Made by a program: the position numbers and the translations under genes
In this document: one piece after another, positions 1,611-32,270 of the stretch
Numbering within the stretch: the first letter of the stretch is position 1
Layout: the number at the start of each line of letters is the position of its first letter
NCBI RefSeq assembly: GCF_001194135.2
Contig: NC_068993.1
Coordinates: 17,534,823-17,570,917, forward strand
Direction: 5' to 3'
DNA length: 36,095 nucleotides
DNA from: Octopus bimaculoides
Lineage: Eukaryota
Notes under the pieces: generated by a model
What the model was told of the DNA's origin: nothing
Seen by the model: the letters and a program-made list of their open reading frames with translations, nothing else
Database searches by the model: none

Positions 1611-2380
1611 CTATATGTGTGTGTAGTGTGTATTTGTGTGGAAGTGTGTGTACATGCAAAACTGCCGTTTAGAGATAAAATTCTAACCATATTCTAAAAT
1701 ACAAAAAAATATTTAAATATATCAAAAAATAAATTTCTAATTTACCTATTTACAAAGAGACCTGGGTTCCATGTAAAAAAAGACCTAAAAAAAAAAACAA
1801 ATATTAAAATTGCTCCAAGATTGCTAATAAAAAATTAATAACAGCTCAGTGAAGTGCATTACAAAAAATATAAATTAAAAACAAAATAAACTAATAAAAA
1901 ATATTCTCTACATAGCAAACAAAATATTAGTTTTAAAATTAAGAAAAAAAAGAATTATTTGTAAAATATATTCAAATAAAAAATCCTCAAAGCAATATTA
2001 ATTTAATTCAAATAACTTGGAAAAATTAAAGGAGATACCAAAACAATATATATATTGTTTGTTCGTTTTACATCTATTTTTATTATTTTCTTTTCATGCT
2101 AGCATAGGTTAGACATGTTTTATCATTGAAGCTCTATTTTGCAGCTAGATGCTCTTCCAGTTGCTAACCCTTACATGTTTTCAATTAAGAAACCTATTTT
2201 GCACATTTTTGAAGGCACAAAGTGAGCAGATGATTTGTTGTCAGGAGAACTAAGAATAATGACACTGCTAACACCGAGCGACTTTTATAGAGCACAAAAA
2301 TAAACAGTGTGCATACATACACACACACAATGGGCTTTTTTCAGTTTCTATCAGCTAAATTTAGTCAAACGGCTTTGGTT

Positions 2381-10910: not shown

Positions 10911-12111
10911 AATTGAGGGATTATTTTATAGGTTTAAGAAGTTATTATTTTTATTCCTTACATGGAATTTATAGTTTCTTAGTCGTACTTGTTTAAAAGG
11001 GTTAGGGTTAGGGTCTTATTGTCTTATTGTACAGAGTTAAAATTCAGGATAATCAAGAAGATTATTAAGAATGAAATTTTAACAAAATGATAAAAAAAAA
11101 CTTCTATGAATATTAAGAGTATATACCAAAATATTTTCTTACCACAATGGAGGGAGGAAAATGAAATAGTTTAATATTTACTTACTTATTACCTATCTAA
11201 ATATTAACTTATTGTATGGTTATTATAAAGATTGATCAATTGGATTTACATAGTATTTAATGATAGACCAACCGAGGTTAAAAACCATGATAATTGTATA
11301 CATTATTTAATTAAATTGAACTGTTTTAAGTTATCAAGATACTGATATTCCCCTATATAGGCTGGGTATAAAATAATAGGGGAAGAAGGATTAGATTTAT
11401 TTAAGTCATCTATAAAATAATAATAACAATAATAATGACAACACCAATAAAATGACTCGTTAAGGTCGAGCATCATAGAAAAAGAATAAAGACAGCCTAT
11501 TCACTAAAAACCCTAATAAAATATCCGTATCTTACTAACTTAAATAGCAAATACTTACAGAAAAAATGTTAAGTAAAAACAATATATCATTATTGGGTAA
11601 AGTTAAAATTTGGTGTTATCAGGAAGAGTTATCATTTAGGTAAGAGACCAAAATTTACTATAAATTAGTTAAATTTTACTCTAAGCAGTTTAAAATCTCA
11701 AGTTTTGAGGATACTCATAATTGTATATTACAAGCTAAGGATGAATTTATAGGGGTGCAAAAATTTAAGTTTTTCTAGAGGTAATTATAATATATTAAAA
11801 ATGGTCAGGTAGGGTTAAAAAAAAATTAGAACAGGATATAAAATAGTCTAATCACTAAAATCATGATGAAATATTACACAACTTAGTAACTTCAATAAAG
11901 AAGATTTATAGAAAGTATGTAATAATTCAAGTATCTAAAACTAAAATTGTTTATTTACTTAATTAACTTGTATCTATACTGACTGCAACCCAATATTAAC
12001 TAAAGGAAAGTTAATGCTATAGGGCATACTACCTATGCACTGATTATAAACTAAGAAGTACATAAGAGGTTATAAGACACAAAATTAATAAATTTCTACT
12101 TTCTAAAATAT

Positions 12112-12350
12112 TTAAAAGTATGGGGGGAAACTATGTACACACAATACTCTAAGGTTTAATCTATTATTAATCAGGTTATTATTTTCTTTATGCCTAAAAA
12201 TTTCATATGCTTCCATAGAGCAAAGCTCCCACCCATATCTGCTATTTCTATAGAGCTGAGCTTTTCTTATTATTTCCCATTTGAGGCTAAACCTGATTCC
12301 ACTTTCTTTCAATTCCCAAATCTTACTGGATAAAGACGTACAATTCGCCT
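12112..12350 (-). mobile_element. Penelope-like element, C-terminal half of the GIY-YIG endonuclease
   Basis: [49 protein letters not shown]; paralogous to 21443-21700. Confidence 0.8.
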
Positions 12351-12351
12351 T

Positions 12352-12490
12352 ATGTATATACATATGTATATTTATGTATATGTATATATGTATATATATG
12401 CATATGTGTGTATATATATGTACATATATATGTATATATATATATATATGTATATATATATGTGTATATATATATATGTATATATATGTA
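12352..12490. repeat. (TA)n/(TATG)n microsatellite
   Basis: Seen directly. Confidence 0.95.
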
Positions 12491-13640: not shown

Positions 13641-13805
13641 TCTTATTCTAGCAGCTACACTTTCAGCGCACCCTCCCTCACTACTGACTTGGTCACCAGA
13701 AATATAGCATCAGTGGTGCTTTTCCCTGACACAAAACCAAACTGCATCTTATCTAAACTGATTCTCTCCCTAATTAGTTGGGCTCTGACCCTCTCCATGA
13801 CTTAC
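13641..13805 (-). mobile_element. Second, inverted RTE RT fragment
   Basis: Minus strand reads VMERVRAQLIRERISLDKMQFGFVSGKSTTDAIFLV, then jumps to a downstream RT segment. Confidence 0.8.
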
Positions 13806-16348: not shown

Positions 16349-16830
16349 GTGTGCTATTCTACAACAAGAAATCTTAGTAATATTATATCCTCTATAAACA
16401 ATGTCAAATTAAATCAATTGTGTAATAACAATTTAACTAATATTAACAATAGCTATGGAAGAAATATAACAAACAAAAAACATAACCGTATTTTAAATAA
16501 ATGTACATGTAAAGATAAATCCAAATGTAGGCTTAATAATGATTTCAACCTAGATAACGAAATTTATAAATGTACTGTAACCTCTCATAATAATAATAAG
16601 AAGAAGAAAGAATTATAGGATCCACAGCGAACGAAATTAAAAGAAGAATTTTCCAGCATTATCAATCCCAAAGTAATAAATTTGACAGGTCTAAATAAAT
16701 ACATATGGGAGTTGAAATCTGATAAAATAGAATACACCCTTAATTGGAATATCATTAGTTGAGCGAAGTCATATAGAATAGGTAATAAAATGTGCTTATT
16801 ATGCACAACAGAGTTTATGAAAATACTCTA
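16349..16830 (+). mobile_element. Decayed Penelope-like linker plus GIY-YIG endonuclease
   Basis: KCTCKDKSKC..IYKCTVT..(frameshift)GSTANEIKRRIFQH..NKYIWELK..LNWNII..CLLCTTE. Confidence 0.8.
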
Positions 16831-17694: not shown

Positions 17695-18323
17695 TGCAAC
17701 CGACATTTACTACAAACTAACAGACTCAAAACAGTATCTCCTTTTCAGTTCATGCCTTCCTAAACACACCAAAATAAATATCCCATTCAATCTAGCAAAA
17801 AGGATCTGTACAATTGTATCTGACACAACCACTCGGGAACTTCACCTACAAGAACTCAAAATAACACTCATTGAACGTCAGTACCCTTATAGAACATGGA
17901 ATTAAACGTGCCAAGAAATTGGACACAAACACACTAAGGACAACAAAACAAAACACCACACCTTACCTTAAATCACTCCCATACATATCAACCCACAACC
18001 CCAGAAACATTGAAGCATACAACACAATTATACAAAATCTCCCTCTGCTCACTCAAGACCCGAAAATGAACAGCATCCTAAATACACACAAACTACTAAA
18101 AAGCAAAAGACAAGACAAATCACTCAAGAGACTCCTAACAAATGCAAAACTCTACTCAATACAAACAATACCAACAGTTAAAAAATGCAGTTGACCTAAT
18201 TGTGGTGCATGCCCATACCTAACTGAAGGCTTGGAATTCACATTCCAGCAAGGAGAAAAATTCTCAATTAAGACCAACTTCACATGTGCCTCCCAGAACC
18301 TTATATATGTCCTAACCTGCCCA
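17695..18323 (+). mobile_element. Penelope-like RT thumb, Cys-rich linker and start of GIY-YIG (different subfamily)
   Basis: KPTDSKQYL.FSSC.PKHTKINIPFNLAKRICTIVS..LPYISTHNPRN..KSKRQ..KKCS*PNCGACPYL..FTCASQNLIYVLTCP. Confidence 0.85.
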
Positions 18324-18787
18324 TGCTCTTTCCAAAACTAGCACCATAATACCCTCAAGAGTTTCAGACCCCACTTCTCTGATTTCTCTATTGATGTTCT
18401 CCTTCTGTTGCACCATGTAAACCCTCTCTTTGAGGTACCCGCATAAGAAAAAATCCAGGTTAGTTAAGTCTGAGGAACATGAAGGCCAATTGACATTGCC
18501 GTAGCAGGAGATTATTCTCTCTCCAAAGCACTGCTGTAGCAACTGCATTGTTTCTCTTGTGGTATGAGCAGTTGCCCCATCTTGCTGGAACCATGTGTGA
18601 GGTCTACTTTGATATGACCTTCATTGTCCCCAGACTTGATGAGCCCAGATACCTGAAAGAGAGGGTTTACATCAACAAACCAGAGACCCTGGTGCAACTG
18701 AAGGAGAACATCAATAGAGAAATCAAAGAAGTAGGTTCTGAAAGTTATTAGAAATTGGAACTCATCAGTGACTTTTGGGACACCCTG
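18324..18787 (-). mobile_element. Tc1/mariner DD41D (rosa-like) transposase remnant with one TIR and an internal inversion
   Basis: WFQQDGATAHTTRETMQLLQQCFGERIISCYGNVNWPSCSSDLTNLDFFLCGYLKERVY; 41 residues counted between the second and third catalytic D; TIR TA|CAGGGTGTCCCAAAAG ends at 18787. Confidence 0.85.
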
Positions 18788-18944: not shown

Positions 18945-19432
18945 TTTATTAACACTTAATATCAAAAGTGTCAAATCCACATAGTTACACATTACTTCAT
19001 GTGTTTCATTTATGAAGTAAAGTGGTAAGAAATGTTTTAATTTTTTCCCTTACCGCCACAAGCCTAATATAAATTATAATTTTATATTTCATCTCATTTA
19101 CTAAAGCTTGTTGATGTTTTCATCTCAATAAAGTTTATTAATACTTAATGTCAACATTATCAAACCCACGTGGCTTATCACTTTCATCGTAAGTTTATTT
19201 ACAAAGTAAAGTGAAAAGAATTATTTCAATGTTTTCTTATAGACAGACTTAATGTATGTAATAATTCTAGATTTCATCTCATTTATTAACGTTTTCCATC
19301 TCATTTATTATAGTTTATTATTAGTTTAACATCAACATTAGCAAAACCATATCATTTACACTGTGCTTCGTAAGTTTATTCATGAAGAAAAGTGATAGGA
19401 AATAATTAAAATTTTTCATTATAGACACAGAC
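18945..19432. repeat. Degenerate tandem repeat, ~180-190 bp unit, ~2.6 copies
   Basis: Unit start TTTATTA..TTAA..TCAA..TCAAA.CCA recurs at ~18945, ~19135 and ~19315; TTTCATCTCATTTA and AAAGTG also recur. Confidence 0.7.
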
Positions 19433-19602
19433 CTGAGGGGAGTAAAACAGTTTAATTTCTTTTTCTTATTTCCTTTATTATTTCAAACAAATCCCTTTTT
19501 GACTTTTCATTCTAAATTGCTCTATTTGTGTAAAGCGTGGCACAAAAGATACTGCTGTGACTGATATGGGCACAAATAAAACTGTACCAAGGTCATACAT
19601 AC

Positions 19603-19662
19603 CCTCACACAAGGCAGCTACAAATAACAGAGCCAGGATAACCAGGATAGCCACCATTGCCA
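19603..19662 (-). CDS. Candidate 60-nt exon of an unannotated small gene; reads AMVAILVILALLFVAALCE(G) or GNGGYPGYPGSVICSCLV*
   Basis: Acceptor tttaatttag|TGGC and donor GAGG|gtatgt; one frame looks like a signal peptide or TM helix followed by a phase-1 intron. Confidence 0.55.
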
Positions 19663-19775
19663 CTAAATTAAACATTACACCCAGTTTTACTATTGAACAT
19701 CAAAGGCTTATTACAATTCAACAAGAGAAACAAAATTCCATAACTGAGAGGATAAGTAATAGATATAGTACTTAC

Positions 19776-19789
19776 TGAAATCCATCTAT
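19776..19789 (-). CDS. Candidate 14-nt microexon ATAGATGGATTTCA (contains a possible start ATG)
   Basis: ctatgttttcag|ATAGATGGATTTCA|gtaagt; its ATG GAT TTC A joins in frame to the hydrophobic frame of 19603-19662. Confidence 0.5.
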
Positions 19790-20233: not shown

Positions 20234-20399
20234 CTAATAACATTCTACTCATCCATAATTGAGTCAATCATGAGTCCAACACCCTAACCACTAAGCCACG
20301 TACCTTCACAACCTGAGAAACTTTACCTTAAAAAGGTAAAGTTACCTTCTCAAGGCATGCCACTTCATAAGGACTGCTTTCTCGGCTTCATGGCATATA

Positions 20400-20707
20400 T
20401 ATTCCCCACCTGGACGGGATGCTAGTCTGTCACAGGATTACTCAAGATTGTTTATGGAAGACCGGCAGTCACCCATGCATAACAGCATCCCCTCTCCATG
20501 CCACCGATGTTATCCAAGGGAAAGGCAAGGGTCGATACAGCTTGGCACCTGTGACATCACAACTCATTTCTACAGCTGAATGAGCTGGAGCAATGTGAAA
20601 TAAAGTGTCTTGCTCAAGGACACAACACGTAACCAGGTCAGGGATTCAAACTCATAACCTCACGATTGTAAGCTCAACGCTCTAACTACTGAGCCATGCA
20701 CCTTCAC
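20400..20707 (-). mobile_element. tRNA-derived SINE with a CORE-like central segment
   Basis: Minus strand has A box TGGCTCAGTAGTTAG and B box GTTTGAATCC; central segment (+) GTGAAATAAAGTGTCTTGCTCAAGGACACAAC. Confidence 0.75.
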
Positions 20708-21442: not shown

Positions 21443-22246
21443 CTAATTTTGAAAATATTTAAATGTATGGGTGACCCTATGTATGCATGATACCCTTAGG
21501 TCTAATCTATTATTAATCAGGTTGCTCTTGTCCCTATACTTAAAAATATCATAAGTTTCCATAGAGCACAGCTCGCACCTGTATTGACTATCTCTATAAG
21601 GTTGCGCTTTTCTTATAATATCCCATTTAAGGCTAAATTCGATTCCGCTTTCCTTCAGTTCCCAAATCTTGCTAGATAAAAACATACAATTGGCCTTATT
21701 TTTGAGCCTAAAAGATGAAAAATGGTTATTAATACATTTTTTCATATTTATTGAACATCCTATATTTACAAAGTTACCAGCTACAGTTGTGATTGTACAC
21801 TTATAGATTACATTTTGGATTAGACATCGGCCTCATAAAGGACAGTGGGATTTAACTCTACAATTGCAACTAGGAGAATTACTACTATTAATATTATTGA
21901 TATTCATATCATTATTATTATCAATATTACTATTAATATTAATCCTACTACTACTATTGTATGTATTATTTACATATCTGGTATTATCTCTCCATCCTTC
22001 AATTGTAGTATCATTCACATTCATCCCAGCATCATCAAGCGTATCAGTAATCCCTGTGCTAGTATAGACTTCAGAACTACAATCTATATTGTATATATTA
22101 GAAGCATTAGTACTGCTATTTCTATTTTCTACATCACCATAAATATTATTATTCACATTGTAGGGGTTTAAGTTAGTGTTGACAGTAACATTATTATTAT
22201 TATTACCATCCCTTGCTAATTTAATATTCTTTTTATTTAACCTCAT
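21443..22246 (-). mobile_element. Penelope-like fragment: Asn-rich linker, CNCRxKxxCPL knuckle and GIY-YIG domain in one frame with one stop
   Basis: ORF 21833-22246 continues in frame after its TGA as GRCLIQNVIYKCTIT..FVNIGCS into ORF 21443-21745 ([24 protein letters not shown]). Confidence 0.85.
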
Positions 22247-22359
22247 CTACTAGGCACTGATGCAGAATGGGTCAAAATGATCGTAGTGACTAATAAAGAA
22301 TCTCATGAATTCTGTTTTGTTTCTCTTTCTCCCATATTTTATATATACATATATAATCA

Positions 22360-22605
22360 TCATCATTTAACGTCCGTTTCCCATGCTAGCATGGGTTGGG
22401 CGATTTGACTGGGGACTGGCGAACCAGATGGCTACACCAAACTCCAATCTGATTTGGCAGAGTTTCTACAGCTGGATGCCCTTCCTAACGCTAACCACTC
22501 TGAGAGTGTAGTGGGTACTTTTTACATGCCACCGGCATGAGGGCCAGTCCGGCAGTACTGGCAACAGCCACGCTCAAATGGTGTTTTTTACATGCCACCT
22601 GCACA
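22360..22605 (-). mobile_element. RTE-type 3' tail / short retroposon
   Basis: (CAT)nTTAACGTCC..CATGCTAGCATGGG..CAGCTGGATGCCCTTCCTAAC; same family as 25598 and 31496. Confidence 0.8.
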
Positions 22606-25597: not shown

Positions 25598-26232
25598 ATC
25601 ATCATCATCCTCATTTAACGTCTATTGCCCATTCTGGTATGGGTTGGATGGTTTGACCAGGTTTGGCAAGCTGAGGGATTGTACCAGACTCCGGTCAAAT
25701 TTGGCATGGTTTCTACAGCTGGATGCACTTCCTAATGCCAACCATTCCAAGAGTGTAATGAGTGGCAATTGTGTGACACTAGTATCTGCTCCAACAATGA
25801 TTTCGCTTAGCTTGATGGGTCTTCTCAAGCAAGGCACATTGCCAAAGATCTTGGTCATTTGTCATTGTGTCTGTGAGGCCCAATGTTCAAAAGGTGATAT
25901 TTGTGTGCCACTGGCACAGGTGCCAGTTACGTGACACCAGCATCAGCCATAACTATGATTTCACTTGGCTTGACGGGTCTTCTCAAGCATGGCATATTGC
26001 CAAAGGTCTCAGTCACTGGTCATTGCCTCTACGAAGACCAAAGTTTGATGATCATGCTTCACCACTTCGTCCCATGTCTTCCTGGGTCTATCTCTATCAT
26101 AAGTTCTCTCCACAGTTAGAGATTGACACTTCTTTACACATCTCTCCTCATCCATATGCCTCACATGACCATACCAGCACAGTTGTTTCTCTTGCACACC
26201 ACATTTGATGCCCAACTTTTCTCTCATATATC
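25598..26232 (-). mobile_element. RTE-clade LINE 3' end
   Basis: QLCWYGHVRHMDEERCVKKCQSLTVE..RPRKTWDEVV, then 3'UTR and (GAT)n tail. Confidence 0.85.
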
Positions 26233-29569: not shown

Positions 29570-29860
29570 TGCATCCATTTCCTGTTGAGCATTCCTAATC
29601 TTGTGGACTTGTGGGTGTTTGTGCCACATAAAAAGCACATGTATCAATGCCATGTAAAAGCACCCAAAGCAGTGCAGCATAAAAGCACCCAGTACACTCT
29701 GTAAAGTGGTTGGCATTAGGAAGGACATCCAGCTATAGAAGCCATACCAAAACAGACATGGAACCCAAGCAGCTTTTCAGCTGGCCAGCTCCAGCCAAAC
29801 CACCCAACTCATGCCAACATAGAAAATGGACGTTAAATGATGATAATGATGATGATGATT
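29570..29860 (+). mobile_element. RTE-type 3' tail
   Basis: GGCATTAGGAAGGACATCCAGCT..GGACGTTAAATGATGAT; reverse complement of the 22360 family. Confidence 0.75.
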
Positions 29861-31495: not shown

Positions 31496-32270
31496 TATCA
31501 TCATCATCATCATCATTGTTTAACGTCCACTTTCCATGATGGCATGGGTTAGATGGTTTGACTGAGGACTGGCAAGCCAGGGGGCTGCACCAGGCTCCAA
31601 TCTGATCTTGCAAGATTTCTACAGCTGGATGCCCTTCCTAACACCAACCACTCTGAGAGAGTAGTGGGTGCTTTTTACATGCCACCAGCACAAGGGCCAG
31701 TCAGGTGGCACTGGCATCGACCATGCTCAAATGATGCTTTTTATGTGCCACCGGCACAGGAGCCAGTCAGGCGGCACTGGCATCGACCACACTCAAATGG
31801 TGCTTTTAATGTGTCACCGGCACTGGCATTGGCCATGACAATGATTTCACTTGACTCAACAAGTTTTCTCAAGCACAGCATATTGCTTGATGATTGAAAG
31901 GTACTTTTAAACGAGCGGGTTATGCAACACTGGCATCAGCCTCAGCTATAATCTCACTTGGCTTGCTGGGTCTTCTCAAGCACAGCATATCTCCAAAGGT
32001 CTCAGTTGCTTATCATTGCCTCTGTGAGACCCAATGTTCGAAGGTTGTTCTTCACCACCTCATCCCATGTCTTCCTTGGTTCACCTCTTCCACAGGTTCC
32101 CTCCACTGTTTGGGTGTGACACTTCTTCACATAGCTCTGCTCATCTATACACAGTTGTCTCTCTTGCACACCAACTGCCAACTCTCACCTTACTGACAGC
32201 ATCCCTGTACATGGCTTGTACAACTCTCACCAAACACTCATCTATCCCTAGTTTCCACATTGATCACCAG
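31496..32270 (-). mobile_element. RTE-clade LINE 3' end with internal ~62-bp tandem repeats in the 3'UTR
   Basis: (CAT)n tail; GTGCTTTT..GCCACC..CCAGTCAGG.GGCACTGGCATCGACC repeated; PRKTWDEVV remnant at ~32050-32080. Confidence 0.85.

What the first reader, a model, noticed from the sequence alone, without database searches (positions are those of the whole stretch)
19419..19785. Candidate 27-aa transmembrane micropeptide MDFMAMVAILVILALLFVAALCEGLCL, or a signal peptide of a longer secreted protein
Seen in sequence: splicing 19776-19789 to 19603-19662 to 19432 gives ATG GAT TTC A|TG GCA ATG ... TGT GAG G|GT CTG TGT CTA TAA. An in-frame TAG lies immediately before the ATG, so the ORF cannot extend upstream through this exon. 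The product is almost entirely one hydrophobic helix, similar in size to single-pass regulators such as sarcolipin/sarcolamban (analogy only, no sequence match claimed). Alternatively, ..AALCEG followed by a phase-1 intron is classic signal-peptide exon architecture; the mature exons would then lie further downstream, and I could not identify them.
Basis: inference. Interest (0 to 1): 0.7.

Follow-up and report, generated by a model that had tools for sequence, protein, structure and literature searches.

The report
Lone signal-peptide-like exon, micropeptide unproven
A short minus-strand stretch encodes one very hydrophobic helix and ends at a good splice donor, so it is most likely the start (signal peptide or membrane anchor) of an unidentified, probably longer, protein; the proposed three-exon 27-residue micropeptide gene rests on weak junctions and has no outside support.

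Summary
Joining 19789-19776, 19662-19603 and 19432 onward (minus strand) gives MDFMAMVAILVILALLFVAALCEGLCL*, with TAG just before the ATG.

The hydrophobic 60-nt core looks real. It is the only transmembrane-like segment in the window's six frames that is neither a simple repeat nor AT-rich. It was absent from 600 simulated windows, and it ends at a top-2% donor (GAG|GTATGT).

The three-exon micropeptide model is weak:
- "Exon 1" is a 14-nt microexon with mediocre sites.
- The acceptor at 19663 scores no better than a median AG.
- An unspliced in-frame ATG (19675, MFNLVAMV...; also 19657 in GCAATGG context) makes exon 1 unnecessary.
- "Exon 3" (GLCL*, AATAAA) is the first unit of a ~190-bp tandem repeat.

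No Pfam, PDB or protein-database relative exists, but the databases appear not to hold this organism. No phase-compatible downstream exon was found in the remaining 19.4 kb.

Non-functional relic or chance is about 0.35, an internal transmembrane cassette exon about 0.1, a true 22-28-residue micropeptide about 0.1, and an unspliced 65-residue ORF about 0.05. Transcript and cross-species data are needed.

The parts
19603..19662 (-). 60-nt core coding (L/M/V)AMVAILVILALLFVAALCE+G. It forms a hydrophobic helix (h-region or transmembrane segment) and is open in one frame only.
   Evidence: for sequence and frames; mean Kyte-Doolittle hydropathy 3.2-3.3 over 19 residues at 47% GC, the only such non-repeat segment. 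for chance estimates.
19663..19702 (-). Unspliced upstream continuation of the same frame. TGA stop at 19702-19700, then CSIVKLGV, then ATG at 19675-19673 (G at -3), giving MFNLVAMV....
   Evidence: frame-0 translation of 19720-19590.
19655..19657 (-). Second in-frame ATG, in the context GCAATGG. It would give a 19-residue N-terminus, MVAILVILALLFVAALCEG.
   Evidence: read directly.
19596..19605 (-). 5' splice site GAG|GTATGT. The last exon base is 19603 and the intron phase is 1.
   Evidence: score 3.4, 72 of 3810 GTs score as well or better (top 2%)..
19744..19763 (-). Alternative acceptor TCTATTACTTATCCTCTCAG| with first exon base 19743. It would define a 141-nt exon, 19743-19603, that must contain the start codon because of the in-frame stop at 19702.
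   Evidence: score 4.4; 33 acceptors at or above 4.4 on this strand.
19776..19789 (-).
   Evidence: acceptor -1.7 (top 17%), donor 0.8 (top 7%).
19663..19682 (-). It has no pyrimidine tract.
   Evidence: score -7.0, the median of all AGs in the window.
19433..19452 (-). Strong acceptor AACTGTTTTACTCCCCTCAG|, 170 nt downstream of the donor. It abuts a donor-like GTCTGT.
   Evidence: score 6.1, top 0.7% of AGs..
19419..19432 (-).
   Evidence: 19427-19419 lies inside the first unit of the tandem repeat, and the equivalent codons are not kept in copies 2 and 3.
19375..19380 (-). AATAAA poly(A)-signal-like hexamer, 38 nt after the TAA. It is also present or near-present in the other repeat units.
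18945..19427 (.). Tandem repeat of about 190 bp, about 2.5 units, about 73% identity.
   Evidence: blastn of the region against the window; alignment A1, mean column identity 74%.
19633..19650 (.). A 9-nt tandem duplication inside the hydrophobic run. On the minus strand it reads CTATCCTGG then TTATCCTGG, two adjacent units differing at one base, which accounts for the repeated IL in AIL-VIL.
19478..19675 (-). Unspliced 65-codon ORF: MFNLVAMVAILVILALLFVAALCEGMYDLGTVLFVPISVTAVSFVPRFTQIEQFRMKSQKGICLK*. This is the rival reading.
   Evidence: no homologue; the GC-elevated island 19500-19680 covers it.

Best explanation
The stretch 19675 (or 19657) to 19603 on the minus strand is the coding end of a start-codon exon. 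It contains an initiator ATG, then a 15-19-residue hydrophobic run and a short polar end (C-E-G). That is a cleavable signal peptide or an uncleaved signal anchor, and it would direct the nascent chain to the ER membrane. The exon ends at a strong phase-1 donor (GAG|GTATGT). The rest of the protein would be encoded by exons not recognisable in this window, either more than 19.4 kb downstream or very short.

Shown: the sequence, the frames, the rarity of the hydrophobic segment and the relative splice-site strengths.
Inferred: that the locus is transcribed, spliced and translated, and that the product is longer than about 28 residues.
For: - The hydrophobic segment is the only non-repeat, GC-balanced transmembrane-like segment in all six frames.
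- It was never produced in 600 simulated windows, and an analytic calculation expects 5e-5 to 0.06 per window.
- The local GC content rises to 0.42-0.45 against 0.2-0.3 in the flanks.
- The codon positions are strongly biased: 10 of 20 first positions are G and 12 of 19 second positions are T.
- The region is unique within the window and is not part of any repeat family there.
- The donor at the end of the run is in the top 2% of GTs.
- An in-frame stop at 19702 followed by two in-frame ATGs, one in GCAATGG context, gives 19- or 25-residue N-termini. Small residues sit at -3/-1 (A-L-C| or C-E-G|) (by inspection).
- A good acceptor at 19743 (score 4.4) upstream of that stop means the exon would have to hold the start codon.
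- A signal peptide on its own exon followed by a phase-1 intron is common gene architecture (general knowledge).
Against: - No downstream exon compatible with phase 1 was found in 19.4 kb. The best candidates are transposon fragments.
- No homologue was found in 5.8 billion proteins, in 1.84 billion representative proteins, or in Pfam.
- The n-region has no basic residue, and a 19-residue h-region (from ATG 19675) is long for a cleaved signal peptide.
- Exon 19743-19603 would carry two short upstream ORFs (ATG 19741 and ATG 19700).
- A very strong acceptor only 170 nt downstream leads to a stop after 4 codons.
- Part of the hydrophobic run comes from a 9-nt duplication.
- A comparable acceptor-donor-acceptor triple occurs once elsewhere in the window with no open frame, so the splice signals alone are at chance level.
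- No transcript or cross-species evidence could be obtained.
Confidence: 0.4

Rival explanations
1. Non-functional sequence. It is either a chance open frame, lengthened by a 9-nt duplication, or the decayed 5' fragment of a duplicated or dead gene. It is not expressed as protein today.
For: - Nothing else in the 36-kb window looks like a host exon. The window is transposon and SINE debris with assembly gaps.
- There is no homologue anywhere.
- There is no continuation exon.
- A splice-like triple also arises by chance elsewhere in the window.
- A 9-nt tandem duplication inflates the hydrophobic run.
- With the locally T-rich composition, the chance expectation rises to 0.06 per window, and the first-stage reader looked through many windows.
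Against: - The chance expectation is still well below 1 per window.
- The strong donor sits exactly at the end of the run.
- The GC rise and codon-position bias are exon-like.
- The segment belongs to no repeat family in the window.
Confidence: 0.35
2. A stand-alone small-ORF gene encoding a 22-28-residue single-pass membrane micropeptide. This could be the reader's MDFM... form, or more plausibly a two-exon form: M(FNLVAM)VAILVILALLFVAALCEG joined to LCL* through donor 19603 and acceptor 19432, polyadenylated after AATAAA 19380-19375.
For: - The donor (top 2%) and the acceptor 170 nt downstream (top 0.7%) are both strong.
- The stop comes 4 codons into the next exon and AATAAA lies 38 nt later.
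- TATAAAA lies at 19844-19838 (by inspection).
- The product would be one hydrophobic helix, as in known membrane micropeptides.
Against:
- The terminal exon is the first unit of a tandem repeat whose other units do not keep the codons.
- AATAAA and TATAAAA are expected tens of times by chance in a 33%-GC window (my estimate).
- A stop within 4 codons is unremarkable in this composition.
- There is no match to any micropeptide family and no homologue.
- Small-ORF genes are far rarer than ordinary signal-peptide exons (general knowledge).
Confidence: 0.1
3. An internal phase 1-1 cassette exon (19662-19603) encoding the transmembrane helix of a large type I membrane protein. Its other exons would lie far upstream and downstream.
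For: - The 60 nt are a multiple of 3 and bounded by AG and GT, with phase 1 on both sides.
- The hydrophobicity and 20-21-residue length fit a membrane span better than a cleaved signal peptide.
Against: - The acceptor at 19663 is no better than a random AG.
- No basic stop-transfer residues follow the helix (C-E-G).
- No phase-compatible neighbouring exons were found downstream, and no protein-like open frames were seen upstream.
- The better acceptor at 19743 is cut off from this frame by the stop at 19702.
Confidence: 0.1
4. An unspliced 65-residue ORF (19675-19478) encoding a two-helix hairpin membrane protein. It would have helix 1 (LVAMVAILVILALLFVAAL), an acidic loop (CEGMYD), helix 2 (LGTVLFVPISVTAVSFV) and a basic tail.
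For: - The frame stays open for 73 codons.
- The GC-elevated island 19500-19680 extends past the donor.
- The charge distribution fits the positive-inside rule (by inspection).
Against: - Stop-free runs of 73 codons are common here. The window has 58 ORFs of 70 residues or more.
- The second half has weak codon-position bias and an A/T-rich third position.
- No homologue was found. The only 'hit' is a translated tandem repeat.
- No such gene product is on record.
Confidence: 0.05

Closest known systems
Eukaryotic Sec-type N-terminal signal peptide or signal anchor, encoded on its own 5' coding exon and followed by a phase-1 intron
   Same: An initiator Met sits after an in-frame stop. A hydrophobic core of 15-19 residues rich in A, L, V and I follows. 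The polar end has small residues at -3/-1 (A-L-C or C-E-G). The exon ends in phase 1 at a strong donor.
   Different: The n-region has no basic residue. The hydrophobic core is at or beyond the upper length for cleaved signal peptides if ATG 19675 is used. No mature-protein exon was identified. No predictor such as SignalP could be run.
SERCA-regulating micropeptides ('regulins'): sarcolipin, phospholamban, insect sarcolambans, myoregulin, DWORF
   Same: The size (22-28 residues) and a single hydrophobic helix filling most of the peptide.
   Different: - The candidate helix has no Asn, whereas Asn11 of sarcolipin and Asn34 of phospholamban are critical (PMC8396278).
- It has no conserved luminal tail such as RSYQY. 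The tail here is CEGLCL.
- It has almost no cytoplasmic N-terminal segment.
- Pfam listed only two unrelated families, both below threshold, even at E up to 10.
- There is no PDB sequence match.
Short secreted peptides such as Drosophila IBIN (Pfam PF22859)
   Same: A weak alignment of the hydrophobic N-terminus to the first 17-21 profile positions, which are the signal-peptide part.
   Different: E-value 0.18-0.21 and 12 bits against a 27-bit cut-off. This is composition only, not homology.

Membership tests
SERCA-regulating micropeptides (sarcolipin / phospholamban / sarcolamban) | Small peptide with a single transmembrane helix | tested here: met
   Mean Kyte-Doolittle hydropathy is 3.2-3.3 over 19 residues. 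This feature is shared by countless unrelated peptides.
SERCA-regulating micropeptides (sarcolipin / phospholamban / sarcolamban) | Conserved Asn in the transmembrane helix (Asn11 of sarcolipin, Asn34 of phospholamban) that contacts SERCA | tested here: not met
   The helix AMVAILVILALLFVAALC contains no Asn or any other polar residue. The requirement is taken from PMC8396278.
SERCA-regulating micropeptides (sarcolipin / phospholamban / sarcolamban) | Conserved luminal tail (RSYQY in sarcolipin) and a cytoplasmic N-terminal segment | tested here: not met
   The tail is EGLCL and the N-terminus is MDF or MFN. The feature is taken from PMC8396278.
SERCA-regulating micropeptides (sarcolipin / phospholamban / sarcolamban) | Sequence match to the family profiles or to solved structures | tested here: not met
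   Pfam at E up to 10 listed only IBIN and OppC_N for the 27-residue peptide, both below cut-off. PDB phmmer gave 0 hits at E up to 10.
SERCA-regulating micropeptides (sarcolipin / phospholamban / sarcolamban) | Muscle expression and binding to SERCA | not testable with these tools
   No expression or interaction data were available.
Sec-type signal peptide / signal-anchor start exon | Initiator ATG in frame, with no possible upstream extension of the frame | tested here: met
   TGA at 19702-19700, then ATG 19675 (G at -3) and ATG 19657 (GCAATGG context).
Sec-type signal peptide / signal-anchor start exon | Tripartite n/h/c structure: basic n-region, hydrophobic core of 7-15 residues, polar c-region with small residues at -3/-1 | tested here: inconclusive
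   By inspection:
- The h-region and the -3/-1 residues fit.
- The n-region lacks K or R.
- The core is 15 residues from ATG 19657 and 19 from ATG 19675.
- No SignalP or DeepTMHMM was available.
Sec-type signal peptide / signal-anchor start exon | Followed by exons for a mature protein in the same phase | tested here: inconclusive
   No convincing phase-1 exon was found in 19.4 kb downstream. The exon may lie beyond the window.
Sec-type signal peptide / signal-anchor start exon | Functional 5' splice site at the exon end | tested here: met
   GAG|GTATGT scores 3.4, in the top 2% of GTs in the window. The matrix is rough and usage was not shown.
Translated small-ORF (micropeptide) gene | Complete transcription unit with credible junctions | tested here: inconclusive
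   - The donor 19603 to acceptor 19432 pair is strong.
- The terminal exon lies in a tandem repeat.
Translated small-ORF (micropeptide) gene | Frame conservation across species, or evidence of translation | not testable with these tools
   - No related genome or transcript could be reached.
- The protein database's best match to a transposase remnant in the window is only 69% identical, from a crab. This suggests the source lineage is not represented.

The most novel reading that the evidence does not exclude
A lineage-restricted two-exon small-ORF gene: exon about 19743-19603, a 170-nt intron, then exon 19432 to about 19355. It would encode a 22-28-residue single-pass membrane micropeptide with no relative in any database. 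Its terminal exon and poly(A) signal would have been recruited from a tandem repeat, which would make it an example of recent gene birth.
Probability: 0.1. Interest if true: 0.5.

Novelty: new member of a known kind. Interest (0 to 1): 0.22.

Why it matters
If the best reading is right, this marks the 5' end of an unannotated secreted or membrane protein gene with a very long first intron. That is useful for annotation but biologically ordinary. If the micropeptide reading were right, it would be a lineage-specific membrane micropeptide with a repeat-derived terminal exon. That would interest researchers working on small ORFs and gene birth, but nothing here shows expression or conservation.

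Tried and rejected
Searches that found nothing:
- Homologues of the 73-codon open frame, word-indexed search.
- Exhaustive HMMER search of the 65-residue ORF. The single hit, P0001, is a translated tandem repeat matched in 12 stretches and is spurious.
- Pfam and PDB searches of the peptides: only sub-threshold compositional matches.
- Full-text search for the peptide string.
- Exact-product look-ups of three window ORFs, to reach the source assembly and its gene calls.
- Degenerate back-translated DNA pattern for VAILVILALLFVAAL in metagenome and prokaryote genome collections, hoping for host contamination.

Database coverage tests:
- A repeat-element ORF found nothing.
- A transposase remnant found eukaryote proteins but nothing closer than 69% identity.
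- I therefore give the negative homology results little weight.

Other checks:
- Pfam on ten transposon-like ORFs: nothing above threshold.
- Rfam and tRNA scan: nothing.
- Search for downstream phase-1 exons by acceptor strength, open-frame length, donor strength, GC and repeat status: only transposon fragments.

Readings rejected:
- A plus-strand exon. The antisense 73-codon ORF 19557-19778 has no usable plus-strand splice sites.
- Membership of a repeat family. The core is unique within the window.

Full report
**Observation.**
- 19789-19776 reads ATAG ATG GAT TTC A and is followed by GTAAGT.
- 19662-19603 is 60 nt, preceded by AG and followed by GTATGT.
- 19432-19419 reads GT CTG TGT CTA TAA and is preceded by CCCCTCAG.
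- Joined, they read *MDFMAMVAILVILALLFVAALCEGLCL*. The in-frame TAG (19788-19786) directly before the ATG is there.
- The other two frames of the 60-nt piece contain stops.

**Context.** The window is AT-rich (about 20-39% GC), has seven runs of N, and is filled with microsatellites, SINE-like and LINE-like fragments and a transposase remnant.
- It is clearly a repeat-rich eukaryotic scaffold. I could not verify the organism.
- The remnant at 18315-18620 (minus strand) matches Tc1/mariner-type transposases, at best 69% identity to a crab protein.
- No other stop-free stretch of 45 codons or more looks like a host exon.
- The segment 19428-21442 is unique within the window.

**Is the hydrophobic frame more than chance?** Probably yes.
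- Of 14 six-frame segments with mean Kyte-Doolittle hydropathy of 2.8 or more over 19 residues, 13 have at most 33% GC and are mostly simple-repeat translations such as poly-I or poly-L.
- The candidate (LVAMVAILVILALLFVAAL, 3.28, 47% GC) is the only one of ordinary A/L/V/I composition.
- None of 600 Markov-simulated 34-kb sequences (orders 1, 3 and 5) contained a segment scoring 3.2 or more at 45% GC or more.
- An independent-nucleotide calculation expects 5e-5 to 3e-3 per window.
- One caveat: a 9-nt tandem duplication (19633-19650) supplies part of the run. With one copy removed the expectation is 0.002-0.06 per window.
- GC rises to 0.42-0.45 over about 19530-19650, against 0.2-0.3 in the flanks.
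- Codon positions are biased, with G at 10 of 20 first positions and T at 12 of 19 second positions.

**Splice signals.** I scored sites with rough position weight matrices written from general knowledge of metazoan splice sites, and ranked each against all GT or AG dinucleotides in the window.

| Site (minus strand) | Score | Rank |
|---|---|---|
| Donor after 19603 (GAG\|GTATGT) | 3.4 | top 2% of GTs |
| Acceptor before 19432 (TTTTACTCCCCTCAG\|G) | 6.1 | top 0.7% of AGs |

- A better acceptor lies before 19743 (score 4.4).
- An exon 19743-19603 would include the in-frame stop at 19702-19700, so it would have to contain the start codon.
- The triple acceptor 19743, donor 19603, acceptor 19432 is one of only two such triples in the window. 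The other (plus strand, 2108/2221/2355) has stops in all frames. Such triples therefore arise about once per window by chance. What counts here is that this one coincides with the hydrophobic frame.

**An unspliced start codon.**
- It reads TGA (19702-19700), CSIVKLGV, then ATG at 19675-19673, giving MFNLVAMVAILVILALLFVAALCEG. A second ATG at 19657-19655 lies in the context GCAATGG.
- The 14-nt first exon is therefore unnecessary.
- As an internal exon it would also be an exceptional microexon, and it would require yet another unseen upstream exon.

**The third piece.** 19427 is the edge of a ~190-bp tandem repeat (18945-19427, about 2.5 units, about 73% identity).
- Nine of the 14 coding letters of GLCL* (19427-19419) and the AATAAA at 19380-19375 lie in its first unit.
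- The other units read AAGTCTGTCTATAAG and TGTGGCGGTAAGGG at the same place, so the codons are not preserved.
- The acceptor's pyrimidine tract is unique sequence just outside the repeat.

**Downstream exons.** I scanned the 19.4 kb downstream for phase-1 acceptors followed by open frames, then for acceptor-donor pairs.
- The scans returned only transposon fragments (mariner at 18469, LINE-like at 13725 and 6888) and unconvincing frames.
- A longer protein would therefore need an exon beyond the window or a very short one.

**Homology.** Nothing was found.
- The word-indexed search of the 73-codon frame found nothing.
- The exhaustive search of the 65-residue ORF found only a spurious repeat protein.
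- Pfam gave only sub-threshold compositional matches, and PDB gave none.
- Exact-product look-ups, degenerate DNA scans and a literature string search all failed.
- A repeat ORF with a second copy in this same window also found nothing, and the transposase remnant found nothing closer than 69%. The databases therefore probably do not hold this lineage, and the negatives weigh little.

**Weighing the models.** These probabilities are my own judgement from the evidence above.
- I put about 0.6 on the core being a real coding exon, based on the rarity of the segment and the strong donor at its end. I put 0.35-0.4 on chance or a dead relic.
- If it is real, the stop, ATG, hydrophobic-run, donor layout, the weak 19663 acceptor and the good 19743 acceptor together favour a start-codon exon over an internal transmembrane cassette.
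- If it is a start exon, base rates strongly favour a longer secreted or membrane protein. The strong acceptor 170 nt away keeps a two-exon micropeptide (M...CEG+LCL*) alive at about 0.1.
- The unspliced 65-residue hairpin ORF has a coherent charge topology. However, its second half shows little codon bias and open frames of this length are common here, so I put it at about 0.05.

**Comparison with known families.** Functionally the segment would act as an ER-targeting signal peptide or anchor.
- Membership of the sarcolipin/phospholamban/sarcolamban group is rejected.
- It lacks the critical transmembrane Asn, the conserved luminal tail and any cytoplasmic N-terminal segment (features from PMC8396278).
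- It matches no family profile.

**Verdict.** The micropeptide gene model as drawn is not supported. It is ordinary if true. No step had to be referred.

Noticed in passing
window 18945-19427: A ~190-bp unit repeated in tandem about 2.5 times at about 73% identity. Each unit carries an AATAAA-like hexamer. Tandem Repeats Finder did not report it at default score; blastn of the region against the window did.
   Followed up: partly
window 19431-19436 (minus strand): CAG|GTCTGT: a very strong acceptor directly abuts a donor-like GT (score 2.8). This is the juxtaposition seen at zero-length-exon (recursive) splice sites in long introns. The +3 C makes the donor atypical.
   Followed up: no
window 18315-18620 (minus strand); 18362-18415 and 18690-18743: C-terminal remnant of a Tc1/mariner-type transposase. 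The best database match is 69% identity to a crab protein named 'Transposase', and one weak hit carries PF13358. A 54-bp inverted duplication (93% identity) lies inside it.
   Followed up: partly
window about 20265-20700 (minus strand): GC-rich (about 50%) element whose head resembles a tRNA (GGCTCAGTAGTTAGAGCG...GAGTTTGAATCCC), followed by a second partial head. It looks like a tRNA-derived SINE about 500 bp upstream of the finding. ARAGORN calls no tRNA.
   Followed up: partly
window 12096-12353 and 21443-21699 (minus-strand ORFs); also 16349-16618 and 18195-18338 (plus strand): Two copies (80% identity) of an element encoding ...[26 protein letters not shown]....ELCSME.Y.I.... Related Cys-rich fragments occur nearby. 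There is no Pfam or database match, so this is an unclassified repeat family.
   Followed up: partly
window 22353-22605, 25601-25763, 29681-29850, 31506-31758: Four copies (74-82% identity) of another SINE-like repeat. Around 31669-31823 it contains a 66-bp internal tandem duplication.
   Followed up: no
window 2108-2221 (plus strand): A strong acceptor, strong donor and strong downstream acceptor (2355) frame a 114-nt piece with stops in all three frames. It is either a non-coding exon or a chance splice-like triple. I used it here as an internal control.
   Followed up: partly
window 19633-19650: A 9-nt tandem duplication (minus strand: CTATCCTGG then TTATCCTGG, two adjacent units differing at one base) inside the hydrophobic coding run. 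It preserves the frame and lengthens the helix by three residues.
   Followed up: yes
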